The position numbers and the translations under genes are program-made. A stretch of 63,947 nucleotides of DNA, counting the filler, from Octopus bimaculoides (taxonomy: Eukaryota), in assembly GCF_001194135.2 (NCBI RefSeq). It is 7 parts of 5 records of this genome, joined end to end, with 100 filler letters (N's around TTAATTAATTAA, not from the genome) between each part and the next. Parts side by side here need not be neighbours in the genome. Positions count along the whole stretch, not along the records: positions 41,687 to 57,875 come from NC_069004.1; 6 more parts are not named here. One strand, written 5' to 3'. The first letter of the stretch is position 1. Each line of letters begins with the position of its first letter. This document shows, in pieces, positions 41,368 through 57,783 of the stretch. A model generated the notes under the pieces. It ran no database searches. It was not told where the DNA came from and was given only the letters and a program-made list of their open reading frames with translations.

Positions 41368-43019
41368 TACACACACATGTATACCAGGTGTAACCAGTAG
41401 TGGTTGAATGGTAAGTAGCTTGCTTACCAACCACATGGTTCCTTCAGTCCCACTGCGTGGTACCTTGGGTAAGTGTCTGCAACTATAGCCTCGGGCCGAC
41501 CAAAGCCTTTTGAGTGGATTTAGTAGGCGGAAACTGAAAGAAGTATGTCGTATACATATATACATACATACATATATATATATATANNNNNNNNNNNNNN
41601 NNNNNNNNNNNNNNNNNNNNNNNNNNNNNNTTAATTAATTAANNNNNNNNNNNNNNNNNNNNNNNNNNNNNNNNNNNNNNNNNNNNTATATATATATATA
41701 TATATATATATAGAGCACCTGTTGCTAAGCAGTAGGGTTGGGGTGGGAGACAAAGACACATACATATAGACATATACAAAGGCTTCTTTTAGTTTCTGCC
41801 TACCAAATCCTCACACAAGGCCTTCATCAGTTTGGGGCTACAGTAGAAGATATTTGTTCAAGGTGCCATGCAGTGGGGTTGAACCTGGAATTATGTGGTT
41901 GAGAAGCAAACTTCTTACCACATGGAATTTCAGTTGTCATCATCTTTTACTGTCCATTCCCCATGCTGGCATGAGTTGGACAGTTAGACAGGAGTTGGTC
42001 AGCTTGAGGGCTGCTTGGGTGTCATTTGTCTGTTTTGGCTTGGTTTCTGAAGTGAGATTCCTTCCTAACACCAGCAACTTTACAAAGTGTATTGGGTGCT
42101 TTTATGTGGCACCAGCACCCACAAGCCTGCAAGACTAAGATCTTTTGGCTGAGTAAGGGATGTAGAAGACATGCCTCCATGCATGAACAACCACTTTCCC
42201 AGATTTTAAATCCAGTTGTTAAAAATATATCTCTTGTTTCAGTCATTAGACCGTGACTATGCCGGATCAGTGCATTGAAGAATTTTAGCTGAATGAATTG
42301 ATCCCAGTACCTACTTTTTTTAAGTCTGATACTTATTCTATCAGTCTCTTTTGCCATACTGCTAAGTCAAGTGATGGTGGGAGACAAACACAGACATACA
42401 CAAACAGGCTTCTTTCAGTTTCTGCCTACCAAATCCACTCGCAAGGCTTTGGTCAAATGAAGACACTTGCCCACAGTGCAACACAGTGGGACTGAATCTG
42501 GAACTATGTTGTTGGGAAGCATGCTTCTTACTACAGTCATGCTTGTGCCTATGTTGATTAAGATTTTACACCATTCACCTTCACTTTAATATAGAAAACA
42601 TTCTTCCTTATAAGATTTTGGCCAAGGTCACATCATGTCAAAGACAGACAGTGATTATAACAAATTTTTGACCTCTGCTTAACCACATGGTCATGAAGAA
42701 AGCTTCTTAACCACATAGCCTGTGCCTGCACCAGCTGAGAGAAGAAAAGACTAACCCTTTTGATATCAACCTGCCTGAGACTGTCCTTGGTTCAATGATA
42801 TAAACTCTGTTTTACAGTGATCTAAATTAAAACCTTCCCTCAAAATTTCATGTTGAGATATGTTCCAAACATCAACTTAATAATGACAAAATTATTTTAC
42901 TCAATTCTTCATTATTTTCAAAATTAACTGAAACAAAAGCAGTGTATATCAACAGAAATATGGTAAGGAAAGGATCAATCAAATTATAAGGGAGGGCAGC
43001 AGTTTAAAAAAAATCTTAC

Positions 43020-43192
43020 CTTTTGTTGAGATAAAGGCTCTTTTGAAGTGGCAGCCTCTTTGGTTTCATCTTTATCTTCCCCTGTGGGAGTACTCACAGA
43101 AAGAACATCAGTTAAAGTGGAACCAACCACAAGCATTTTGGCACCTTTGGTAACTTTTAGCTCCCGCAATGTCATATCATCTCTTGCTAAAC
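43020..43192 (-). CDS. UBFD1: UBFD1 exon (GLARDDMTLRELKVTKGAKMLVVGSTLTDVLSV..KEPLSQQK)
   Basis: Matches UBFD1 GLVPEDKTLREIKVTSGAKIMVVGSTINDVLAV..KEPLCRQK as recalled; cag acceptor, gtaaga donor, phase 1 to 0. Confidence 0.92.
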
Positions 43193-43659: not shown

Positions 43660-43695
43660 CTTTAAACATAATTTTTTGCATGGTAGCAGGAACAC
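43660..43695 (-). CDS. UBFD1: UBFD1 36-nt exon (GVPATMQKIMFKG)
   Basis: Matches GLPPAMQKVMYKG; strong pyrimidine tract plus tag acceptor, gtattt donor, phase 1-1. Confidence 0.92.
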
Positions 43696-46318
43696 CTAGA
43701 ATAAGATAAGGAAAAGAAAAAAACAGTTAAGTGAAAAGTTCATAAAAAACAGAAGAGAATCTAACTGTTGTGCTGGTGACAACTGAAATTAATGGTAAGA
43801 GAGACAGAAATGTCGAAAATTGAGAGTAACTGTGGTGACAAACTATGTTGTTGTTTAGGTTCTCGTCAGCTCTAATTGAGAAAACCATAACCATTGCATC
43901 ATTTATTGCTCTGTACCAGACATCTGCCACTCCCTCCATTCACTCCTGACACCCCTGCCCCACTCATACCTTGAAGGTCCACTCTGATACCTCATCACCA
44001 CTTACAAACTCTCCAGTTCCACCATCTCTTCCAAAATGTGAGAAGTTATATAGCTCCTCTTCAGCAAGAAACCAGTTCTGCTCTGGCCCTTTATCTCTCC
44101 CTACTCCTTATTCTCTTAACACAAAGTTCCTCTTCCCAAACTCTAGGTTTGTAGTCAATCATGTTGCATGACAACTTCACTAGTGCTGTTAGTAAAAAAA
44201 AAAAAAGTACCCAGTGGACATTGTAAAGTGGTTAGCATTCCGAAGGACATCCACTTATAGAAACCATGTCAAAGCTGACACTAGAGCATGATGCAGTCCT
44301 TGGGCTAACTGAATTCTGTTTAAAGCATTCAACCCATGCCAGCATGGGACATGGACATTAAAGGATGATGAATATGATAGTCCAATCAGTACCTTTTTGA
44401 TTTAGGATTATGATGATGAAAGTAGTGAGGGTGAGGAATGTCACAAATGGAAAAATGCTTAACAATCCAGGCCCATATATAATCGACTAAAGCCCTATTT
44501 TTTTGGTATAATATTAACTTTTTAGCAAACTTCCAAAGTTTGTGCTTCATTTTGCCAAGGACAAGCAATCTCCACCCCACACACTAGACATTTGAGGGAA
44601 CTCGAGTTCTGTGCTGGCATCTGTCCATCTCAAGAGATAAAATGGAGTTTGCACTACTGGTCAGTAAATGCTCCAGGACAGAAGTCTGGGTTAGGTATAT
44701 GGAGGTCCTAAGTCACCCAGGTACTAGAATCTCCCTCACAGCCATGCTAGTGTGATCCAAAAGAGTACAGAGCAGTATATTTGGAACTTGACACTAAACC
44801 AATACCTCATGCAAGAGTTGCTGGATTAGTGTCAAGTCAAACACAAGGGAGACAAGTATTTAAAAGTTAACCAGAAATAATTTATACATTGAATAAACTA
44901 CAATATTAGTTAAGTTTATTTCAATCATGCAAGGGAAACAACTCAAGACACATTTTCCTTGTAAAAGATCTCTTCAGCAAAGTATAAACTTCTCTCAAAA
45001 ATATACAGCTGATTTGACAGAGAATTAAATACCTTACAGAATATATTCCAACTCTCTGCATTCTGAGTTCAAATCCTGCTGAGGTATACTTTGCCTTTAA
45101 TCATTTTGGGGTCAATAAAATAATTATAGAACTGCTAAAGCATCAAACAAAGATGTCTTTGCATCTGGAGTTTTTGTGTGGTGCCCAGTTAATATTACCA
45201 CTTTGTCTTTAGCAGAATTCATCTTAATGTAAGCATTTGGGCAAAGTTTCCAGTTTGAGAACATCCTCTCACTAGTCTCGGAGGCTCTAGAAAAATAAAC
45301 AGTAATGGGTGCTGCCCTTCCCTCTCTGACTAAACAGTGACAAAAAGAAAAATAAGAGTTCACTAATGTGTGTAAAAAACTGGCCTATTTTAGAGAATTA
45401 CTCAGACACCAGCAGTACAAAGTGCTGCAAATATAGTATGCATGTGGATGATATATATATTGGTTTCAAATTTTAGCACAAGGCTAGCAATTTCGTAGGA
45501 AGGATTAAGTCGATTACATTGATCCCCCAGTGTTCGACTGGTACTTATTTTATCAACCCCAAAAAGATGAAAGGCAAAGTCGATCCAGTGACATCTGAAT
45601 TCAGAAAGTAAAAGAAAGACAAAATGCCATTGGGCATCTTGCCTAGCGTGCTAACAATTCTTCCAGGTTGCTGCCTTATGGACGATAAATATTGAGAGAG
45701 AGAGAGAGAGAGAAAGAGAGATACAGTTAGGTACTGAGATAAATTAGCCTGTGAATATGATTAGGCTTTATAAAATAGGAACTAACATGCAATGTGACAA
45801 GGATTAAATAGATATTTTATTAAAAGATATTCTTAATTTGCAATAACATGAAAAATTGTCAGTGTTGGCAAATATCATTTGTGGGCCAAAATGCCATTTA
45901 GAATATGCATAGACAGGAATGTAATTATACATCAATGTGGATGTATTGGGAGGCATGAATGAATGCAGAGACAGATTTATATGCATGATTACATATAAGG
46001 TGATGATGAGTTTTGGGACAAAATGCCATCTAGAATATGCATAGACAGGAATGACAATAATAATCAGAATTGAGTTGTTCACCACCTGGTGGTATATCAC
46101 AGAAACTCAGCTCCTAGCTTCATTCTTGTTTCATCTTTCAATGGCTGAGTCTACTTTCTAAGAGCAAATATTGGAAAGAACCTATAATAACCAAACATGT
46201 AACATTGCCTGTATCTATAGTTGCATACATTTGTATCCATGCATATGTGTGTTTGTTTGTTTATAGTTTTAGCTTAGAGCTGCGGCCATGCTGATGCACC
46301 GCCGTGTTAAAGTGTGCG

Positions 46319-46438
46319 ATGCTTACAGCACCTAGGTTTCCCAAGTGGTCACCCATCTAAGTACTCACTAGGCTCGACGTTGCTTAACTTCGGTGATCGG
46401 ACGAGAACCGGTGCTCTCAGCATGATATGGCCGTAAGC
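46319..46438 (-). rRNA. 5S rRNA sequence (120 nt; dispersed, probably retroposed copy)
   Basis: GCTTACGGCCATATCATGCTGAGAGCACCGGTTCTCGTCCGATCACCGAAGTTAAGCAACGTCGAGCCTAGTGAGTACTTAGATGGGTGACCACTTGGGAAACCTAGGTGCTGTAAGCAT; typical metazoan 5S with the internal control region; no oligo-T terminator directly after it. Confidence 0.92.
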
Positions 46439-46603
46439 CATATGTGTTTGTGTGTGTAACATTTTTTATGATACAATCATCAAACGTCATAGACTGAGAA
46501 GTAACAATAAATAAGAAATGATAAAAATAGAGAAATTGTAACAAATACAGTGTAAGATGAGCATGACGAAAAGACAATTTATAAGAAGCACCAAGTAACT
46601 TAC

Positions 46604-46744
46604 CAATAATTTTTTCAATGCTGCTCTTCACCTGGCTGATTGTTTTATCCAAATCAAACTCGACATCAAATTTCTGTTTATTAAATACTACTTTAAACGG
46701 TACGCATTCTTTTGGGGTATCTGCAGTACTGCAATTTGGAGTTT
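46604..46744 (-). CDS. UBFD1: UBFD1 exon (start of the ubiquitin-like domain: KECVPFKVVFNKQKFDVEFDLDKTISQVKSSIEKIIG)
   Basis: Matches ELVDLKIIWNKTKHDVKFPLDSTGSELKQKIHSITG as recalled; ctctacag acceptor, gtaagt donor, 141 nt, phase 1-1. Confidence 0.9.
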
Positions 46745-48210: not shown

Positions 48211-50067
48211 TATTGTTTCACTTAGAGATGGTCATATTTTGCCAATTAAACACATGCACTGTGTCTAATTGGCAAAATATGACCACCCCCAAGTAATAAT
48301 ATCTGTTTCAACCCACAATTTCACATCAAGAATCTTACAAAACAAATGCATAAACACACACACAGATTCTGAGATCAAATCATGTTACATTCACTACTAG
48401 AATTTCAGTGAAATAAAGTACCAGTAATACACCTGTGTCAATATTAATTCAACTGTTTATTACTTAAAGAAAAAAATAGTCTATTTAAAAATAAATTGAT
48501 ATATAAGATCGTCTTGATAAAAGAAAAACAAAAAACACTGAGTTTGGCAAGAGAACAAGTAAGAAGTGTTTAAACCCTTTTGAGATTCTTATAAAATGGG
48601 AGAAAATTGAAGGAAGTTAGACATTGATCAGTTTCAGGTTTAAGATTGTAGACAGACCGGAACCAAATGTTTATGTCATTCATAAACAATAGGTCTACCT
48701 TGATCAAGCTTACAGACATATGATACAAAGGATTTCAGTCAAGATCCTCCAAGCTTACAGCATGTGAAAAACTTTGTTATGTAGATACCATTTTTTAAAG
48801 ATGATAAGGTTTAATTTGAAACAAATTTAGGTATTTCTAGCAGGTCAAATGATTTCAGAGATAGCCCCCATATTAGTTTGTAATATGAAGAAGTATTTGA
48901 AGGGTGAAACAGGATAAAACACGAGAGATGAGAAGAGAGATAGACAGACAGACTGCTCCTTAACAATTATTTTAATTAAATATTCAGGATAAGTATTAAT
49001 TCCTGGTTGAAGCCACTTCCCTTTCATCAATAAAATTCTCTCCAAAAATTTGGCTTCTTGGTTCTTATGCAAAAACATTCTAATCACAGACATCACATGT
49101 ATGTTGGTTTATAGAATAGGTACATCATATCCTGAGGTATTGTAAGAGACTAAATAGGTTGGTGCCAGGAAGGGCATCTGGCCATAAAACACTGCCTTAA
49201 TAAGTCCCATGTAAGCATGAAAAAGGATTATGATGATGATTAAGCCACTGTAATCAGCTGAGCATACAACCCTATCTTTCTCACAAATAATGGTTTTAAA
49301 AACTGGGAAATCATTTACAATAAACTATCTCTGACCTTGTTGCAGCTTTATTTATTAACTGGGTACAATTGAGAGCTGCAGACAAAATGTGAATCAGAAA
49401 GTCCAAACCAATTTGGAACATATAAAAAAGTACATAATTTGTACTTTTGTAATTTGGTCTAGCTAGGCATGCTGGGACTATGCCAAGTCATTGTAAGCAT
49501 ACTAGCTCCGTATATATAATGTATATAGAATATCAGATTAGTAAGCTGTTTGAGTGCCAATTAATTAGTAAAGGAGCTGATAGCTCATGTTCACAATAAC
49601 AGTGGCATGTTATGACAAAGTGAAGCCCTTTCATCTCTAAATAATTTTTTTTTAAAATCAATCCACCGAGTTGTAAATGGATTACATGAAAATGTTACAG
49701 TTCATCAATGAAAGCAATGAAGCAAAATAAATTTGTTGAATACGCTTGCTTTGTTTACAATACTGATATTTGAATCCATCTATCTAAGCACAGTTAAGAC
49801 AACCCAATATAGTGTTTCTAAATGATGCAGAACTCATTCCATTGAAAACAAAATGGTTTAATCACTGACAGTGATTAAACATTTAGTAAGTGATCGAGTA
49901 TAAATAATGAGTAGAATCACTAAAACCATTGAAGGTAGTGACAACCTGTGGTCACAGTCCAATAACTGCATGCACATACATTTATTTATATATATATAGA
50001 CATATATATAAACTTACTTGGAAATAGATGCATGGCATTCAATCAAATAATAATATAAATAATATAT

Positions 50068-50388
50068 ATATGCATATATGGGTACAGGACATCACAAAAC
50101 ATAACATGAAATACGAAAATAAAATTGGGTACGCAAACAACGAGAGAAACAAACGGAAGACAAGTAACGTAAAAAACGATCCTTCATCAGTTGTTGGCTG
50201 TCCTTCTACTCCCTATTTCGAACATTGAATGACAATGCTTGAAATAGGGAGTAGAAGGACAGCTGACAACTGATGAAGGATCGTTTTTTACGTTGTCTTC
50301 CGTTTGTTTCTCTCGTTGTTTGCGTACCCAATTTTATTTTCGTATTTCATGTTATGTTTTGTGACGCCCTGTACCCATATATGCATAT
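50068..50388. repeat. Near-perfect 321-bp palindrome (foldback element)
   Basis: Arms of ~160 bp, 5-nt loop AATGA at 50228-50232, few mismatches and one small indel. Confidence 0.95.
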
Positions 50389-50443
50389 CTACATACATAT
50401 ATGTATGTATGTATATATGAGTATATACATATATTATTTATAT

Positions 50444-50476
<33 letters not shown>

Positions 50477-50477
<1 letters not shown>

Positions 50478-50780
50478 GCGCAGATGTGGCTATGTGGTAA
50501 GAAGTTTACTTCTGAACCACATGGCTCTGGGTTCAGTCCTATATGTCTTCTACTATAGCTTTGGGCTGACCGAAGCCTTGTAAGGGGATTTGGTAGGTGG
50601 AAACTGAAAGAAGCTCATTGTATGTGTGTGTGTGTGTCTTGTGCCTGTGTTTGTCCCCTACCACTGCTTGACAACCAGAGCAGCGAAAGAGACTAGGGGT
50701 CAATTCACATGACTAAGAATCTTTCAAGGCGATGCCCATCATGGCTGCAGTCTAACAACTGAAACAAGTAAAAGATAAAA
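50477..50780 (+). mobile_element. SINE family A, CpG-decayed copy
   Basis: Homologous to 22807-23217 with many CpG>TpG/CpA changes; other decayed copies at about 41735-41925 and 42225-42550. Confidence 0.8.
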
Positions 50781-51223
50781 CGTGTATGTATGTGTGTGTG
50801 TATACAAACATACATACACACACATGTATATGTGAAAGCAAAGACAGTTGTCATATATGTAGATGGTATAAAATTCATGGAAAACTGGACTAATAGCAGT
50901 ACTGAACAGCCTAGTCCACCCAACAGTGGTCAGTCAATATCAAAGGTTGTTTGCTGCACCAATGTAAGCAGTGAACTTGAGCTAATCACACCATCATAAG
51001 TCCTACATATTTCGGCAAGTCAAAATGATTTATCAAAGTGTGTGTATGTATGTATATAAATAAAATATAAAGAAAGAGAGGTATCATAACCAAATGGGTT
51101 TATTGGATTTCAAATGCATCGAACTATGCATTACATCCCTTTGTTTTGTTTCGGTCTACTATGTGGTTTGTAGCCTGATCCATTAAAGGTTTTTTTTATG
51201 TACACCACTGGATAAGTTAAATC

Positions 51224-51885: not shown

Positions 51886-53086
51886 ACAAACTTGTTATGT
51901 AGCCTAGACTTGAGTGACTAAATTGGCACCCACCAGGTTACCTAGCAACCCAATAGGATAAAAACAAAACCTGTTGAGAGGACAGATGAATTGAGCATCA
52001 AGTCAATAACTAGCTAGCGATTGTGTATGACGACAGAAATACTTGATACAGTGATCAAGCACATTGTGAGAGCTCCTTCCTCAAGATTTTGTGACAACAG
52101 GTGTCTAAGAGAGGATCAGACAACGCTGCTTATGGTATGACCTGCCTACACCACCCTGATGCCTTATGGAGGATTCAAAAAAAAAAAAAAAAGAGTTAAG
52201 GGAATACATCCTGAAAGAAAACAAGTGGTATCAGTTTGGTTTAACCCTTTTGATACCAAACTACCTGCGACTATCTTGGTTCCATAGTATAACTGTCTGG
52301 TTTCCAAAAGTTCTGAATTAAAATCTTCCATTAAAACTGTTAATTTAAGTTCCTAATACCAGCTTGATAATAACAAAATCACTTTATTAAATCCTTCACT
52401 CTATTTTAAATTGAAGTAGACACAAGTATCTCAACAGAAATATGGAAATAAAAGGGTTAAAGTGATCTACATAAAAACATTCCATTGAAATTTCAAAACA
52501 CCTGCTTAATAATGACAAAATAATTTTGCTAAATTCTTCATTATTTTCAGAAATAATTAAACCAAAAGCAATGTATTTCAACAGAAATATAGTAACAAAA
52601 GGTTTAAGCTGGTTTCCAACAAACTGGCCTGGAATCATTCTTGCCACTGGATTTATCTCCCTCAGAGTTAAGACAGTGATACTGGCAAATGTTCACCCCA
52701 ATACCACTACACAACCTCACTGCATAGGTATCTCCTCCTGCAATGAGGAACATGGATCTTGAGTAGGGCTGTTGAAGAGTGCAATCCACAATACGAGATC
52801 AAGATTATAAACAGAGTAGGGGATATTTGATGCATGGTATCCTCTTCTGACTACATGAGATGTTATGACTCATCTTCTGAGAGACGAGTCATAACAGCTA
52901 GTCATGTTGTAAGAAGACAAACATCAAGGGTACGTGTGCATGTGCACGTACAGACATCATCATCATCATCATCATCATCGTTTAACGTCTGCTTTTCATG
53001 CTAGCATGGGTTGGACGATTTGACTGAGGACTGGTGAAACCGGATGGCAACACCAGGCTCCAGTCTGATTTGGCAGAGTTTCTACA

Positions 53087-53574
53087 TCTATATATGTATA
53101 AAAATGAGAATGTTTATCTGTGTGTGTGTGTGTGTGTGTGAATCCCTAAAACTCCAGAACTACACAACCAATTTCACACTTAGTGTCCCGGTTGTGTTTC
53201 AGTCAAAAAAAACTTTTAACTTCTTGCATAGTTCGAGCCCACAGCAACATCATATCTCCTCCACTATTTAAGTATTATGAGTCAAAAGTGAAACAAAAAC
53301 ACTCATGTCAAATACTTTCTCTTTAAAAATGAAACCTTTCCACTATTTCAGTATCAGAACTGAAACAATCACATTTCGATACTGTAATGACAGATACTTC
53401 CACTTTAATGGTTTCATTTTCATACAGAATCTACTACAGTGAAACTATACTCTCACATATATACAGGCATACATACATACATATATACATACATACATGC
53501 ATGTACAAATGTATCCATATACATGTATATATATATATATAAATTGTAAATCCAAAAAATAACAACATAACTAC

Positions 53575-53622
<48 letters not shown>

Positions 53623-54463
53623 NNNNNNNNNNTCCTGGGGCTAAAAGCAACAGTAACATCCACCCCTAGGAGTCAGCCACATTTAAGTGGCAATATACTT
53701 CACTTTATATATATATAGATATACATCTATATGCATACATGTATATGTATACATATGTAGATGTATATATTTAGATGTACATGTAATATGTACACATATA
53801 TACAGGCATACAGATATCTATACCTATATACACCCATACACACACACACACACACATGCACACAAACACACACATTATTCATTTGTTTTTTTATCCAAAA
53901 CTACATCAAAAGTACTGAAGGGATCTTTATGAAATTTGGAAATTATATTCTATGCATAACGGCCATAACCCTCATGAAAATTCATATGTTTTTGATGATG
54001 AAATTTTAACCATACATATTACACACAAATAAAGTAATATTTCTAAAATTTCTTCTTCTTAGAAGTTACAAAGACCCCTTAATGGGGACTTCACATGCAC
54101 AATTTAGTCATTTTTCCTAAGCAAAGACGAATACAGTTGTACCATTGGTAGCTATAGGGTCACCCAAACATAACAGATGAGCATTATTTCTAATTCAACG
54201 GTACAACAGTGTAAGACTATCCTTTCAGATATAGTTACATTGTGATTTCTGCAATGTGGTGCATAAATTGTCAAGTAAATGAGATGCATTTTTGCCTCCA
54301 CTGATTCACTTGCAAAGTGTTGAGTAAAATTATTTCGTTGCAGACCTCCTTTGAGTTTTTTTATTATCACTGGGTCACACATAGTCACCAGTTGGTAACA
54401 TTGATTTCAAGGCCTTCCCAGATGAGTGACTGGTTGTTCTAAGACGTCAGGTATCTCTGCTAG
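53087..54463 (+). mobile_element. Possible non-autonomous Helitron
   Basis: 5' A|TCTATATATG.. and 3' ..GGTATCTCTGCTAG|T; similar 3' ends at about 47700-47727 and 57850-57875. Continuity across the internal gap is unproven. Confidence 0.45.
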
Positions 54464-54489: not shown

Positions 54490-55402
54490 CAGTGAGAGCT
54501 AGCAGTGACCTTCATGAATCAGTGTGCCAAGTGACATTGCCGTGTTTACTTTGCAGGTTGTGAAATTTGTTTTTGTGATCACAGGTATGCTGTAGTCTGC
54601 GATTTTCTCATGGAGAGGAACAAAGAACCAATGCAAAATCCTGTGTTAAACTTGGGATGTCTGCTACAGAGACATTGAGCAAGCTTACAGCGACAGGGCA
54701 AAGGGTCTTACGCAATGTTTTGAGAGGCACAGGTGCTTCAAAAGAGGAAGAACATCCCTAGAAGACAAACCACAAACATCGCCCCCAGAAATGTAGTACT
54801 GCGCATTGAGAATTTGTCCTCCAGGGCTAGACCATCAATTGAGAGTTCTACTATGATGTTTTGAAGCATTTGAGGGAGAACATTCAACAAAAGCAACCAG
54901 ATCTGTGGAGTGTGAAGAATTGGATTCTCATGACGACAATGCACCCTGTCATTGAGCTCTCCCACTTGCGAGTTTCTTGCCAAAAACAACATGGTATCGC
55001 TTCTGCACCCACCCTGTTCACCAGATTTAGCCTCTGCAGGCTTCCATCTCTTCCCCAACATGAAAATGCAGCTCAATGGTTGCCATTTTAACACTGTTGT
55101 CAAGATCCAGAGCGAATCCCAGGTTCTCGACCTACTTACAGAAAATGACTTCCAGGCTGGATTCCAGTAGTAGCCAGAATGCTGAGACCAGAGCCAGCTC
55201 AAAGTACTGGCAACTCAGGCATGACAAAGACAAAAATTATACTTGTAAGGGCACCAAATTTCAGCTTGCCAAGGGCACCTGGCTGGTACCAGTGTATTGC
55301 TGTGCGAGATGACTATTTCAAAGAAAATGATGTTAAAACTTAGGTAAATAAGTTATTTCTTATTAAACATAGTTAGTCTGGGAACATTTTTCATACCACC
55401 TC
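54490..55402 (+). mobile_element. Non-autonomous mariner, same family as 35965-36830
   Basis: HPPCSPDLASAGFHLFPNMKMQLNG and a 3' TIR; a third fragment of the family lies at about 57468-57632(-). Confidence 0.85.
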
Positions 55403-55568
55403 ACATACACACGTAGGTCTATATATATCATTATTGTTGTTTAACGTCTGCTTTTCATGACGGCATGGGTTGGACAGTTTGACTGAGGACTGGCGAGCCA
55501 GAAGGCTGCACCAGGCTCCAATCTGATCTTGCAAAGTTTCTACAGCTGGATGCCCACCCTAATACCAA

Positions 55569-56084: not shown

Positions 56085-56381
56085 TATACAAAACTAGGCA
56101 TAAATAATGATTATTACTTATTTTTCAGTATTGTAGTAAATTTGACTTAGAGCTGTTTCCAGTAATCATTATAGGTTCATTATTGATAAGTTTACTCAAT
56201 TGGCCCATTGATTGGTTGAGAAAAACTGAATGACCTAGAAAGTTAATGCTACTTTTGTTCCAGGGTCGATTGAGTAAACCCATCAATAATGAACTTATGA
56301 CTACTGGAAATAGCTGAGAGTCAAATTTACTACAATACAGAAAAATATGGAATGACCATTATTTCTGCCTTGTCTTGTGTA
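56085..56381. mobile_element. MITE-like foldback element with ~120-bp imperfect inverted arms and TA ends
   Basis: GTATTGTAGTAAATTTGACT..TTCCAGT..GTTCATTATTGAT..TTTACTCAAT mirrored at 56265-56381. Confidence 0.8.
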
Positions 56382-57783
56382 CACACACACTTGTTAGAGC
56401 CAACAGAAGTGATATTGTTCATTGCCAGTAAAACAAAAGTCCATTTATTGTATTATTGATGATATGAAAAGGTCATTGACTAAATGGGACATTCATCTGT
56501 CTTGGCTCATAGGATAGTAGAGTTCAGTTGATGTGAGCATTAGTAGCTTGATTTAACTGAAGAGCTCTTAAAAAGACAAACACTGCAAAAATCACCAGGA
56601 CTAAATACATAACAGCAAAGCCTCAACAAACACACCCAACATGCTAGAACTAGCAAGCAAATCTTCCTCAAATTATATCCATCTCCTTCACTAAAAAAAA
56701 GACACATCAGACAATGTTGTCCTGTACACACCTAAAAGAATAAAGGATGATCAAGGCAAAAACACTTGATTGTAGCATTGCTCTTTGAAGACTGACTTTT
56801 AGACACTAGATGAAGCTTTCTGTGCTGTTCAGTGAGTTAATGTATTTTTACATGACTTAACAGAAAACAATCATTATTTAATGTCCATTTTCCATGTTAG
56901 CATGGGTTGGACAGTTTGAAAGGAGATGGTGAGCCAGAGGACTGCCCAGTTCCAATGTCTGCTTTGGCATGGTTTCTATGGCTGGATCCCCCTTCCTAAT
57001 GCCAACTGTTTTACAGAGGGTACTGGGTGCTTTTTATGTAGCACCAGCAAGGTCACCAAGTAATTTGTAAAATCAAAGACCCCCCCCCCTCAACTGAGGA
57101 GGGTGGTAATATTGAGAGAGTTGTCTCTATGTGAGGTGATGAGAGATTAAAGTATGACAGAGAGACAGATGCATGTGTCATAATGTAGGGGAGACATATA
57201 TATGGTCACTCCCGTTAAAAAGAGAGAGAGCAATAAGATAGCAATGAAGATGTGCCAGGGCCTACTCTTGAACTGCAGGAAGGTGAATGTAAGACAATAA
57301 AGCAATCATCATAATCATTTAATGTCTGCTTTCCATGCTCGCAGGAGTTGGACAGTCTGACAGGAAAGAGCCAGCTGGAGAGCTGCCCAGGCTCCACAGA
57401 TCTGTTTTGGTATGGTTTCTATGGTTGGATGCCCCTCCTAAAGCCAACCGCATTACAGAGTGTAGTCCTCTGAAAAAGTCATCTTGCACAGCAATACACT
57501 GGTCCGAGCGTTCCTGCCACTTTTGGAATCCAGTCTGGAAGTCGTTTTCTTTAAGCGAGTCGAGGACCTTCTGCGATTTGCTCTTGATCTAGACAATGGT
57601 GTTAAAACTGTAAACTTTGAGCTGCATTTTCAGATACAATCCATCCCATTCTTATAAAAATTATAATTCTGTCCAAATTGGTGTGCTGAACTCAAACTGT
57701 TGTTTCTGCTCAGCATTAAAATTTACTCCACAAATGTTTTGTTAATGCTGCACTTGCCCAAATCACCTGTTCCAACGTAACTG

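What the first reader, a model, noticed from the sequence alone, without database searches (positions are those of the whole stretch)
46242..46447. 5S rRNA head plus SINE 3' tail flanked by a TSD: candidate 5S-derived SINE or chimeric retrocopy in a UBFD1 intron
Seen (minus strand): a complete 120-nt 5S is followed by CGCACACTTTAACAC and then GGCGGTGCATCAGCATGGCCGCAGC. That matches the 3' tail of the window's main SINE family (GGCGGTGCTCCAGCATGGCCGCAGTC) and is followed by an A-rich/(AAAC)n end. The unit is flanked by CATATGTGT at 46242-46250 and 46439-46447, and has no Pol III T-run after the 5S. Known: SINE3 elements pair a 5S promoter with a LINE-recognised tail, and template switching makes such chimeras. 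Inference: a 5S-headed SINE sharing its tail with tRNA SINEs; I am not aware of one described in cephalopods.
Basis: partly seen in the sequence, partly recalled or inferred. Interest (0 to 1): 0.72.

Follow-up and report, generated by a model that had tools for sequence, protein, structure and literature searches.

The report
Retroposed 5S rRNA fused to SINE tail
A young 188-bp retrocopy in a UBFD1 intron joins a complete 5S rRNA sequence to the 3' module used by the genome's tRNA-type SINEs; this design is already known from insects, fish and mammals, and I could not test whether it is one copy of a family or a single accident.

Summary
A full-length 5S rRNA sequence lies at 46320-46438 on the minus strand (Rfam 107.8 bits against a threshold of 38). 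No T-run terminator follows it. Instead there is a 69-nt 3' part: a 16-nt junction, a GC-rich hairpin (GGCGGTGC-AUCA-GCAUGGCCGC) and an A-rich (AAAC)n end. A perfect 9-bp repeat, ACACATATG, abuts both ends of the whole unit.

The 3' part aligns with the tail of a tRNA-type SINE copy in the same piece; only 1 of 2000 shuffles scored as well. CpG observed/expected is 0.87 in the 5S part and 1.15 in the tail, against 0.25 for the whole piece, so the insertion is young. Two distant relatives have no 5S in the orthologous UBFD1 intron.

This is one retroposition event of a "5S head plus SINE/LINE-type tail" composite. HaSE3/HaSE1 in moths and CoeSINE5/CoeSINE4 in coelacanth have the same design.

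The key question is whether it belongs to an amplifying family of at least 100 copies or is a one-off template-switch chimera. I could not test this, because no collection I could reach held DNA sharing this genome's SINE families. I lean slightly towards a family (about 0.5 against 0.4). Either way it is a new member of a known kind, of moderate to low interest.

The parts
46439..46447 (-). Upstream copy of the target-site duplication, ACACATATG. It abuts 5S position 1.
   Evidence: (family D11).
46320..46438 (-). Full-length 5S rRNA-derived head, 119 nt, covering the region that holds the internal Pol III control elements (box A, IE, box C).
   Evidence: RF00001, 107.8 bits, model positions 1-120 with two non-canonical pairs; 35 of 41 highly conserved consensus positions are kept, and CpG observed/expected is 0.87.
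46304..46319 (-). 16-nt junction segment TCGCACACTTTAACAC. Its 3' nine bases (CTTTAACAC, 46304-46312) already align with the tRNA-type SINE tails. Only about 7 nt (TCGCACA) have no assigned origin.
46280..46303 (-). GC-rich hairpin core of the tail, GGCGGTGC-ATCA-GCATGGCCGCAG. It forms 4+4 bp around a 4-nt loop.
46251..46279 (-). A-rich 3' end, CTCTAAGCTAAAACTATAAACAAACAAAC, with three AAAC units. It is homologous to the TCTAACAACTGAAACAAGTAAAAGATAAAAC end of the tRNA-type SINE.
46242..46250 (-). Downstream copy of the target-site duplication, ACACATATG.
46604..46700 (-). Host context: 3' part of the UBFD1 exon that encodes the start of the ubiquitin-like domain (...FKVVFNKQKFDVEFDLDKTISQVKSSIEKIIG). 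The GT donor is at 46603-46602. The element starts 155 nt into the intron, in the same orientation as the gene.
   Evidence: weak PF00240 hit.
43660..43695 (-). Host context: a UBFD1 micro-exon (GVPATMQKIMFKG) that closes the host intron. Coordinates are approximate.
   Evidence: The same micro-exon is present in L003 and L004.
50475..50785 (+). Reference copy of the tRNA-type SINE, whose 3' tail is homologous to the element's 3' part.
   Evidence: CpG observed/expected is 0.31, so it is an old copy.
42225..42552 (-). Second, more decayed copy of the same tRNA-type SINE with its tail.
   Evidence: CpG observed/expected is 0.21.

Best explanation
The unit 46251-46438 (-) is a retroposed copy of a 'simple' 5S-headed SINE (SINE3 type). 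It has a complete 5S rRNA sequence, which would supply an internal type-1 Pol III promoter. This is joined almost directly to the roughly 60-69-nt 3' module (GC hairpin plus A-rich/(AAAC)n repeats) that the genome's tRNA-type SINEs also carry. That module is presumably what a partner LINE's reverse transcriptase recognises.

How it would work:
- Pol III starts in the 5S head of a master copy.
- It finds no T4 terminator and reads through the tail.
- The LINE enzyme binds the hairpin and repeat tail, nicks a target such as CAAACACATATG, and primes on the (AAAC)n end.
- It copies the RNA to its 5' end and leaves a 9-bp target-site duplication.

The founding element would have arisen when the reverse transcriptase switched template from a SINE or LINE tail to 5S rRNA.

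Shown here: the parts, their order, the tail homology, the target-site duplication, the missing terminator, and the young age. Inferred: Pol III transcription, the LINE partner, and above all that other copies exist.
For: - **Intact head:** full-length 5S with near-perfect structure.
- **No terminator:** the longest T run inside the element is 3.
- **Shared tail:** the 3' part is homologous to the tRNA-type SINE tail in the same piece, with 1 of 2000 shuffles reaching the score.
- **Hairpin kept:** the tail core folds into a stable hairpin.
- **Single event:** a perfect 9-bp duplication abuts both ends of the composite.
- **Young insertion:** CpG observed/expected is 0.87 and 1.15 in the two parts, against 0.25 in the surrounding DNA and 0.21-0.31 in the old SINE copies.
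- **Separate tail lineage:** because both halves are undecayed, the roughly 25-30% divergence of the tail flanks from the tRNA-type SINE copies arose before insertion. This suggests a separate tail lineage, not a copy of the main SINE.
- **Precedent:** HaSE3/HaSE1 (PMC3272025) and CoeSINE5/CoeSINE4 (PMC5786205) show the same design, and SINE3 families have arisen independently many times (PMC10886601).
- **Cephalopod hint:** the giant squid genome has about 24,000 5S-derived loci 'likely to be SINEs' (PMC6962438).
- **Sampling argument (inference):** a randomly read 16-kb piece is far more likely to hit a member of a multi-copy family than a unique accident.
Against: - I found no second copy anywhere. 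There is none in the 16-kb piece even at Rfam E<=10 or with nhmmer, and none in 41 kb of related loci.
- Protein-level searches for ORFs across the junction found nothing. These searches had very low power.
- The 5S part is as well formed as a real gene (107.8 bits). That is what a direct copy of cellular 5S rRNA would look like, whereas many SINE3 heads have drifted.
- The element has no body segment.
- The copy-number criterion of the SINE definition is untested.
Confidence: 0.5

Rival explanations
1. It is a one-off chimeric retrocopy. During a single target-primed reverse transcription event, a LINE reverse transcriptase began on the 3' tail of a SINE or LINE RNA. After about 69 nt it switched template to the 3' end of a mature cellular 5S rRNA and copied it to its 5' end. 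The locus is then a dead-on-arrival pseudogene, or at most a potential founder, and not a member of a family.
For: - The architecture matches the template-switch chimeras described for U6, U3 and 5S with L1 or Alu: a full-length small RNA in sense orientation at the 5' end, a 5'-truncated retroelement 3' end, an A-rich tail, and a target-site duplication around the whole (PMC4494074; bioRxiv 10.1101/2025.02.02.635956; PMC4758252).
- The 5S part is pristine and full length. The join falls within a base or two of the expected mature 3' end (...AAGCA|T), and the U-run is absent.
- MAFFT aligns the 5S 3' end (TAGGTGCTGTAAGCATCGCAC) with the SINE segment TAGGTACTGGGATCAATTCA. This microhomology could have guided a switch.
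- No second copy was found.
Against: - Such events are rare per genome, so meeting one in a 16-kb sample is unlikely beforehand compared with meeting a family member.
- Outside the hairpin the tail differs clearly from the tRNA-type SINE copies although the element is young. The donor was therefore not the common SINE.
- In the primate LINE-1 catalogue, 5S/LINE-1 chimeras are mostly truncated and antisense (bioRxiv 10.1101/2025.02.02.635956), unlike this one.
Confidence: 0.4
2. There were two independent events. A 5S retropseudogene and a severely 5'-truncated SINE or LINE tail landed next to each other, and the flanking 9-mer match is a coincidence in CA/TA-rich DNA.
For: - The piece is rich in CA/TG/TA microsatellites.
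- Nine-mers recur nearby at 0.3-0.9% of positions.
- About 7 nt at the join (TCGCACA) have no assigned origin.
Against: - The 9-mer abuts the 5S position 1 and the end of the (AAAC)n tract exactly.
- No alternative duplication flanks either half alone.
- Both halves have the same undecayed CpG content, as expected for one event.
- 5S RNA has no tail of its own with which to prime retroposition.
Confidence: 0.05
3. It is a dispersed 5S gene or orphon, or a fragment of a 5S array moved at the DNA level, and the downstream sequence is array spacer.
For: The 5S sequence scores like a functional gene. An A/T-rich stretch, ATAAAAAA, lies at -31 to -24.
Against: - There is no T-run terminator.
- There is no second unit in 16 kb.
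- The downstream sequence is homologous to a SINE tail.
- A target-site duplication is present, and the site is intronic.
- Two relatives lack any 5S in the orthologous intron.
Confidence: 0.03

Closest known systems
HaSE3 of Helicoverpa armigera and its tRNA-headed partner HaSE1 (PMC3272025; PMC5786205)
   Same: A 5S rRNA-derived head is joined to the 3' region of a tRNA-derived SINE of the same genome. Copies sit in introns with target-site duplications of 8-19 bp. [quoted passage not shown]
   Different: HaSE3 shares a body of about 246 bp plus the tail with HaSE1, and that tail traces to an RTE LINE. Here only about 60-69 nt are shared, there is no body, and no LINE partner has been identified. 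HaSE3 is known from several copies and species; here there is one copy.
SINE3 of zebrafish and other 5S-headed SINEs (CoeSINE5 in coelacanth, SINE-1_Pmo in python, MEG-R in fruit bats, OS-SINE1/AmnSINE1 in salmonid fishes and amniotes)
   Same: The head comes from 5S rRNA with an internal type-1 Pol III promoter and the tail is recognised by a LINE. CoeSINE5 and CoeSINE4 are a 5S/tRNA pair that share their 3' sequences (PMC5786205).
   Different: Those are multi-copy families with consensus sequences and usually a body or LINE-derived segment, and their 5S parts have often drifted. The known hosts are fish, reptiles, mammals and insects (PMC10946416; PMC4494074), not molluscs.
Template-switch chimeric retrocopies (U6/L1, U3/L1, 5S/L1, snRNA/Alu)
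   Same: They arise in a single event. The small RNA is at the 5' end and a truncated retroelement 3' end follows. An A-rich tail and a target-site duplication enclose the whole.
   Different: They were described for L1 with poly(A) tails in mammals, and each junction is unique. In primates the 5S parts are mostly truncated and antisense (bioRxiv 10.1101/2025.02.02.635956). Here the 5S is complete and in sense, and the tail is a hairpin plus a microsatellite-like repeat, the stringent type.
Stringent-type LINE/SINE 3' modules, such as eel UnaL2/UnaSINE1 (Kajikawa and Okada 2002; from my own knowledge and as cited in PMC5786205)
   Same: A short stem-loop is followed by short tandem repeats at the very 3' end, shared between elements that use one reverse transcriptase.
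   Different: No LINE carrying this hairpin was found in the DNA available. Recognition by a reverse transcriptase is inferred, not shown.

Membership tests
SINE (SINEBase formal criteria, PMC3531059) | Short (<1 kb), interspersed, non-tandem repeat. | tested here: met
   The element is 188 bp between its target-site duplications. There is one 5S in 16 kb and no tandem unit.
SINE (SINEBase formal criteria, PMC3531059) | [quoted passage not shown] | not testable with these tools
   None of the reachable collections held DNA sharing this genome's SINE families. Junction and SINE-core patterns gave 0 relevant hits in metagenome, genome and viral contigs. The window's ORFs are absent from the protein collection. 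Junction-ORF searches were empty.
SINE (SINEBase formal criteria, PMC3531059) | At least 60% identity with tRNA, 5S rRNA or 7SL RNA over at least 60 nt. | tested here: met
   The covariance-model match is full length at 107.8 bits. Identity to the Rfam consensus is 80 of 118 positions (68%), and 35 of 41 highly conserved positions are kept.
SINE (SINEBase formal criteria, PMC3531059) | Distinct from an RNA pseudogene: either extra body or tail sequence, or diagnostic changes shared among copies but not with the cellular gene. | tested here: inconclusive
   Extra 3' sequence homologous to a SINE tail is present. Diagnostic substitutions could not be assessed, because I had neither the species' 5S genes nor any other copy.
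SINE3 (5S-headed SINE) | Internal type-1 Pol III promoter (box A, IE, box C) retained and no terminator before the tail. | tested here: met
   The whole 5S, including positions 50-97, aligns to the model with high posterior probability. The longest T run is 3. Promoter activity itself was not tested.
SINE3 (5S-headed SINE) | 3' tail shared with, or recognised by, a partner LINE. | tested here: inconclusive
   The tail is shared with a tRNA-type SINE and folds into a hairpin followed by (AAAC)n. No LINE with this 3' end is present in the piece or in the fetched loci.
Template-switch chimeric retrocopy | A full-length small RNA at the 5' end in sense orientation, a 5'-truncated retroelement 3' end, an A-rich end, and a target-site duplication around the whole. 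| tested here: met
Template-switch chimeric retrocopy | The junction is unique in the genome. | not testable with these tools
   The same limitation as for copy number applies.
5S rRNA gene or 5S array unit | A T-run terminator directly after the gene, and tandem repetition with spacer. | tested here: not met
   No T4 occurs for 296 nt after the 5S end (69 nt of tail plus 227 nt of flank). There is only one 5S in 16 kb at E<=10.

The most novel reading that the evidence does not exclude
This locus is a copy of a recently born, still active 5S-headed SINE family in an octopod. That would be the first SINE3 characterised in Mollusca. It would have been created by swapping a 5S head onto the hairpin/(AAAC)n tail module used by the abundant tRNA-type SINEs. 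It would also explain the tens of thousands of unexplained 5S-derived loci reported in cephalopod genomes.
Probability: 0.45. Interest if true: 0.45.

Novelty: new member of a known kind. Interest (0 to 1): 0.34.

Why it matters
If it is a family, it extends 5S-headed SINEs to molluscs. [quoted passage not shown] It would also be a very clean example of head swapping on a shared LINE-recognition tail, with an almost unaltered 5S head and no body, so it would be close to the moment a SINE is born. It would give a concrete candidate for the roughly 24,000 '5S-derived loci' noted but not analysed in the giant squid genome (PMC6962438).

There are practical consequences too. Such copies inflate 5S gene counts in Rfam-based annotation of cephalopod genomes. 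Young copies could serve as presence/absence markers.

If it is a one-off chimera, it is an ordinary by-product of LINE activity. Its only value would be as evidence that the tail-recognising LINE was recently active.

Tried and rejected
- **DNA scans for the junction.** The pattern GGTGCTGTAAGC-N(8-30)-GGCGGTGCNNCAGCATGG gave 0 hits in metagenome, genome and viral contigs.
- **Tail motif alone in metagenomes.** It gave one hit, a high-GC bacterial contig, which is a chance match.
- **Core of the tRNA-type SINE in genome and viral contigs.** It gave 0 hits, so those two collections hold no DNA carrying this SINE family.
- **Six-frame concatenated pseudo-protein of the element.** It returned only generic 5S-array ORFs of at least 204 aa. 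The tool seems to keep hits of comparable length to the query, so this search was wasted.
- **Antisense 5S-plus-tail frame.** It gave 4 generic 5S ORFs, none with the tail.
- **Exhaustive HMMER search with the 31-aa ORF across the junction.** It gave one weak, irrelevant hit.
- **Exact look-ups of 14 different ORFs of the piece** (20 entries over three look-ups, several given twice). None is on record, so the source genome is not in the protein and contig collection.
- **UBFD1 exon search.** It brought only unlabelled ORF fragments. The closest was 81% identical, on a 1-kb Logan contig. The two long contigs, L003 and L004, share none of the window's SINE families, so they are too distant for a true empty-site test.
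- **Literature.** I found no paper describing a cephalopod or molluscan 5S-headed SINE, and no paper containing the tail motif. The octopus genome paper and the 1983 paper of four marine-invertebrate 5S rRNA sequences are not held.
- **Whole-element MFE fold.** It does not reproduce the canonical 5S fold. I disregarded this, because the covariance-model alignment is the appropriate test.
- **Pfam on neighbouring ORFs.** It gave nothing beyond a weak ubiquitin hit.
Full report
**What is there**

Rfam finds one 5S rRNA match in the 16.2-kb piece, at 46320-46438 on the minus strand. It covers model positions 1-120, scores 107.8 bits (gathering score 38) and has only two non-canonical pairs. No other 5S-like sequence appears even at E<=10 or with nhmmer and sensitive blastn. 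ARAGORN finds no tRNA gene.

Read on the minus strand, the unit is, in order:
- ACACATATG, the upstream copy of the flanking repeat (46447-46439).
- The 5S sequence, GCTTACGG...GCTGTAAGCA (119 nt).
- TCGCACACTTTAACAC, a 16-nt junction segment.
- GGCGGTGCATCAGCATGGCCGCAG, the GC-rich core of the tail.
- CTCTAAGCTAAAACTATAAACAAACAAAC, the A-rich end.
- ACACATATG again (46250-46242).

The longest T run in the element is 3, and the first T4 on that strand lies 227 nt downstream. A 5S gene terminator is therefore absent.

**Is the flanking repeat real?**

ACACATATG occurs three times on the minus strand of the piece and never on the plus strand. In this microsatellite-rich DNA, a 9-mer recurs 150-260 nt downstream at 0.9% of positions overall and 0.3% locally.

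Here the two copies abut the 5S position 1 and the last AAAC unit exactly, which makes chance still less likely. Allowing a 2-nt slip, the match extends to CAAAC(AC)ACATATG. The (AAAC)n end therefore overlaps the target sequence, as expected if the tail repeats annealed to the nicked target. I accept it as a target-site duplication of a single insertion.

**Is the 3' part a SINE tail?**

In my piece the motif occurs only inside the element.

The piece does hold three copies of a tRNA-type SINE, at 50475-50785 (+), 42552-42225 (-) and 41922-41742 (-). The third has its 3' part cut off by the edge of the piece. Their heads show box A-like and box B-like motifs on direct reading, though they are too decayed for ARAGORN or Rfam.

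The tail of the 50475 copy (...ATCTTTCAAGGCGATGCCCATCATGGCTGCAGTCTAACAACTGAAACAAGTAAAAGATAAAAC) aligns with the element from CTTTAAC to the A-rich end. The Smith-Waterman score is 29, against 13.8 +/- 2.2 for shuffles, and 1 of 2000 shuffles reached it. The older 42552 copy aligns in the multiple alignment but is not significant on its own.

Homology therefore begins about 7 nt after the 5S end. The "linker" is mostly tail.

The core folds into a hairpin of 4+4 bp with loop AUCA, at -14.4 kcal/mol. The decayed 50475 copy has lost the fold.

A stem-loop followed by short repeats is the layout of stringent-type LINE and SINE 3' ends. That reading comes from established knowledge and is not tested here.

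**Age**

| Region | CpG observed/expected |
|---|---|
| 5S part of the element | 0.87 |
| Tail part of the element | 1.15 |
| Whole 16-kb piece | 0.25 |
| Old tRNA-type SINE copies | 0.21-0.31 |

Both halves are undecayed, so the insertion is recent and the halves are the same age. It follows that the clear divergence of the tail flanks from the tRNA-type SINE copies arose before insertion. The tail came from a related but distinct source: another SINE lineage or the LINE itself.

**Context**

The element lies on the same strand as UBFD1, 155 nt into the intron that follows the exon ending ...SSIEKIIG. The GT donor is at 46603-46602. The intron is closed by a micro-exon, GVPATMQKIMFKG, at about 43660-43695, and the next exon is at 43020-43192.

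The gene identity rests on two things. The orthologous loci L003 and L004 have the same three exons in order, and a neighbouring called gene in L003 carries PF25343 PH_UBFD1_C. A weak ubiquitin-family hit supports this.

In L003 and L004 the orthologous intron is about 0.7 kb and has no 5S; here it is 2.9 kb. Those two relatives share none of the window's SINE families, so they are distant. This shows only that the insertion is specific to this lineage.

**Family or single accident?**

This is the question that matters, and I could not answer it.
- Both metagenome scans, both genome-contig scans and two viral-contig scans found no DNA from this genome or a close relative.
- The window's ORFs are not in the 15-billion-protein collection.
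- Three protein-level attempts to catch ORFs across the junction found only generic 5S ORFs or nothing. Their power was low, because such short ORFs are seldom called.

The indirect arguments point both ways.

For a family:
- A random 16-kb sample is much more likely to hit a multi-copy element than a rare accident.
- The tail is a distinct variant with its hairpin preserved.
- 5S-headed SINEs have arisen repeatedly (PMC10886601), often by taking over the 3' part of a tRNA-headed SINE of the same genome: HaSE3/HaSE1 (PMC3272025) and CoeSINE5/CoeSINE4 (PMC5786205).
- The giant squid genome holds about 24,000 5S-derived loci that its authors consider likely SINEs (PMC6962438).

For a one-off chimera:
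- The 5S part is as good as a real gene and is full length.
- The junction sits at the expected mature 3' end.
- There is no body segment.
- The layout is exactly that of template-switch chimeras (PMC4494074; PMC4758252; bioRxiv 10.1101/2025.02.02.635956).
- The 5S 3' end resembles the SINE segment that would precede the tail, which could have guided a switch.
- No second copy was seen.

I put a family at about 0.5 and a one-off chimera at about 0.4. Adjacent independent insertions get about 0.05 and a DNA-level 5S orphon about 0.03.

**Comparison with what is known**

The design of a 5S head on a tail shared with a tRNA-headed SINE is established. SINEBase requires three things: a short interspersed repeat, at least 100 copies, and at least 60% identity to 5S over at least 60 nt (PMC3531059). 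The first and third are met, and the second is untestable here.

Reviews list 5S-derived SINEs in fish, reptiles, mammals and insects only (PMC4494074; PMC10946416). I found no paper describing one in a mollusc.

The best case is therefore a new member of a known kind in a new phylum. The worst case is an ordinary chimeric retrocopy.

**Organism**

I could not verify the organism. The tRNA-type SINE resembles, from memory, the abundant octopus SINE, and the nearest UBFD1 exon ORFs are unlabelled sequencing-run contigs.

Noticed in passing
window 50062-50394: A long foldback: 102-nt arms that are 96% complementary and 129 nt apart, plus an inner pair at 50166-50227 / 50233-50294 that is 94% complementary. 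It lies directly upstream of the tRNA-type SINE at 50475. It gets only sub-threshold miRNA-hairpin hits in Rfam. It may be a MITE or a palindromic insertion.
   Followed up: no
window 56085-56381: A second inverted repeat, with 85-nt arms that are 84% complementary and 127 nt apart. It looks MITE-like.
   Followed up: no
window 41933-42061, 52968-53089, 55427-55547, 56864-56992, 57305-57433: Five copies of a second SINE-like family (repeat families D9, D10 and D17). On the opposite strand they end in ...CATGAAAAGCAGACGTTAAACGATGATGAT, a (GAT)n-type tail. This tail is unrelated to the tail of the 5S element.
   Followed up: no
window 54738-55312 and 57319-57657: Inverted repeats about 2.3 kb apart (55061-55191 against 57499-57632). 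ORFs there read ...HPPCSPDLASAGFHLFPNMK..., which from memory resembles the C-terminus of mariner/Tc1 transposases. Pfam gave no hit.
   Followed up: partly
window 46462-46469 (-): An A/T-rich ATAAAAAA stretch lies at -31 to -24 relative to the 5S start. It is in flanking intron DNA, outside the target-site duplication. Many 5S genes have a TATA-like upstream element at this position, so this copy might happen to be transcribable.
   Followed up: no
window 45874-45934 and 46006-46066: Two 61-nt direct repeats, 82% identical and 132 nt apart, lie 180-370 nt downstream of the element in the same intron.
   Followed up: no
window 43660-43695 (-); L003 about 6880-6915; L004 about 9275-9310: A conserved UBFD1 micro-exon encoding GVP(A/P)(T/S/A)MQK(I/L)M(F/Y)(K/R)G. 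The intron that precedes it is 2.9 kb in the window but only about 0.7 kb in the two relatives.
   Followed up: partly
window 53623-53632: A 10-N assembly gap sits inside an (AT)n microsatellite.
   Followed up: no
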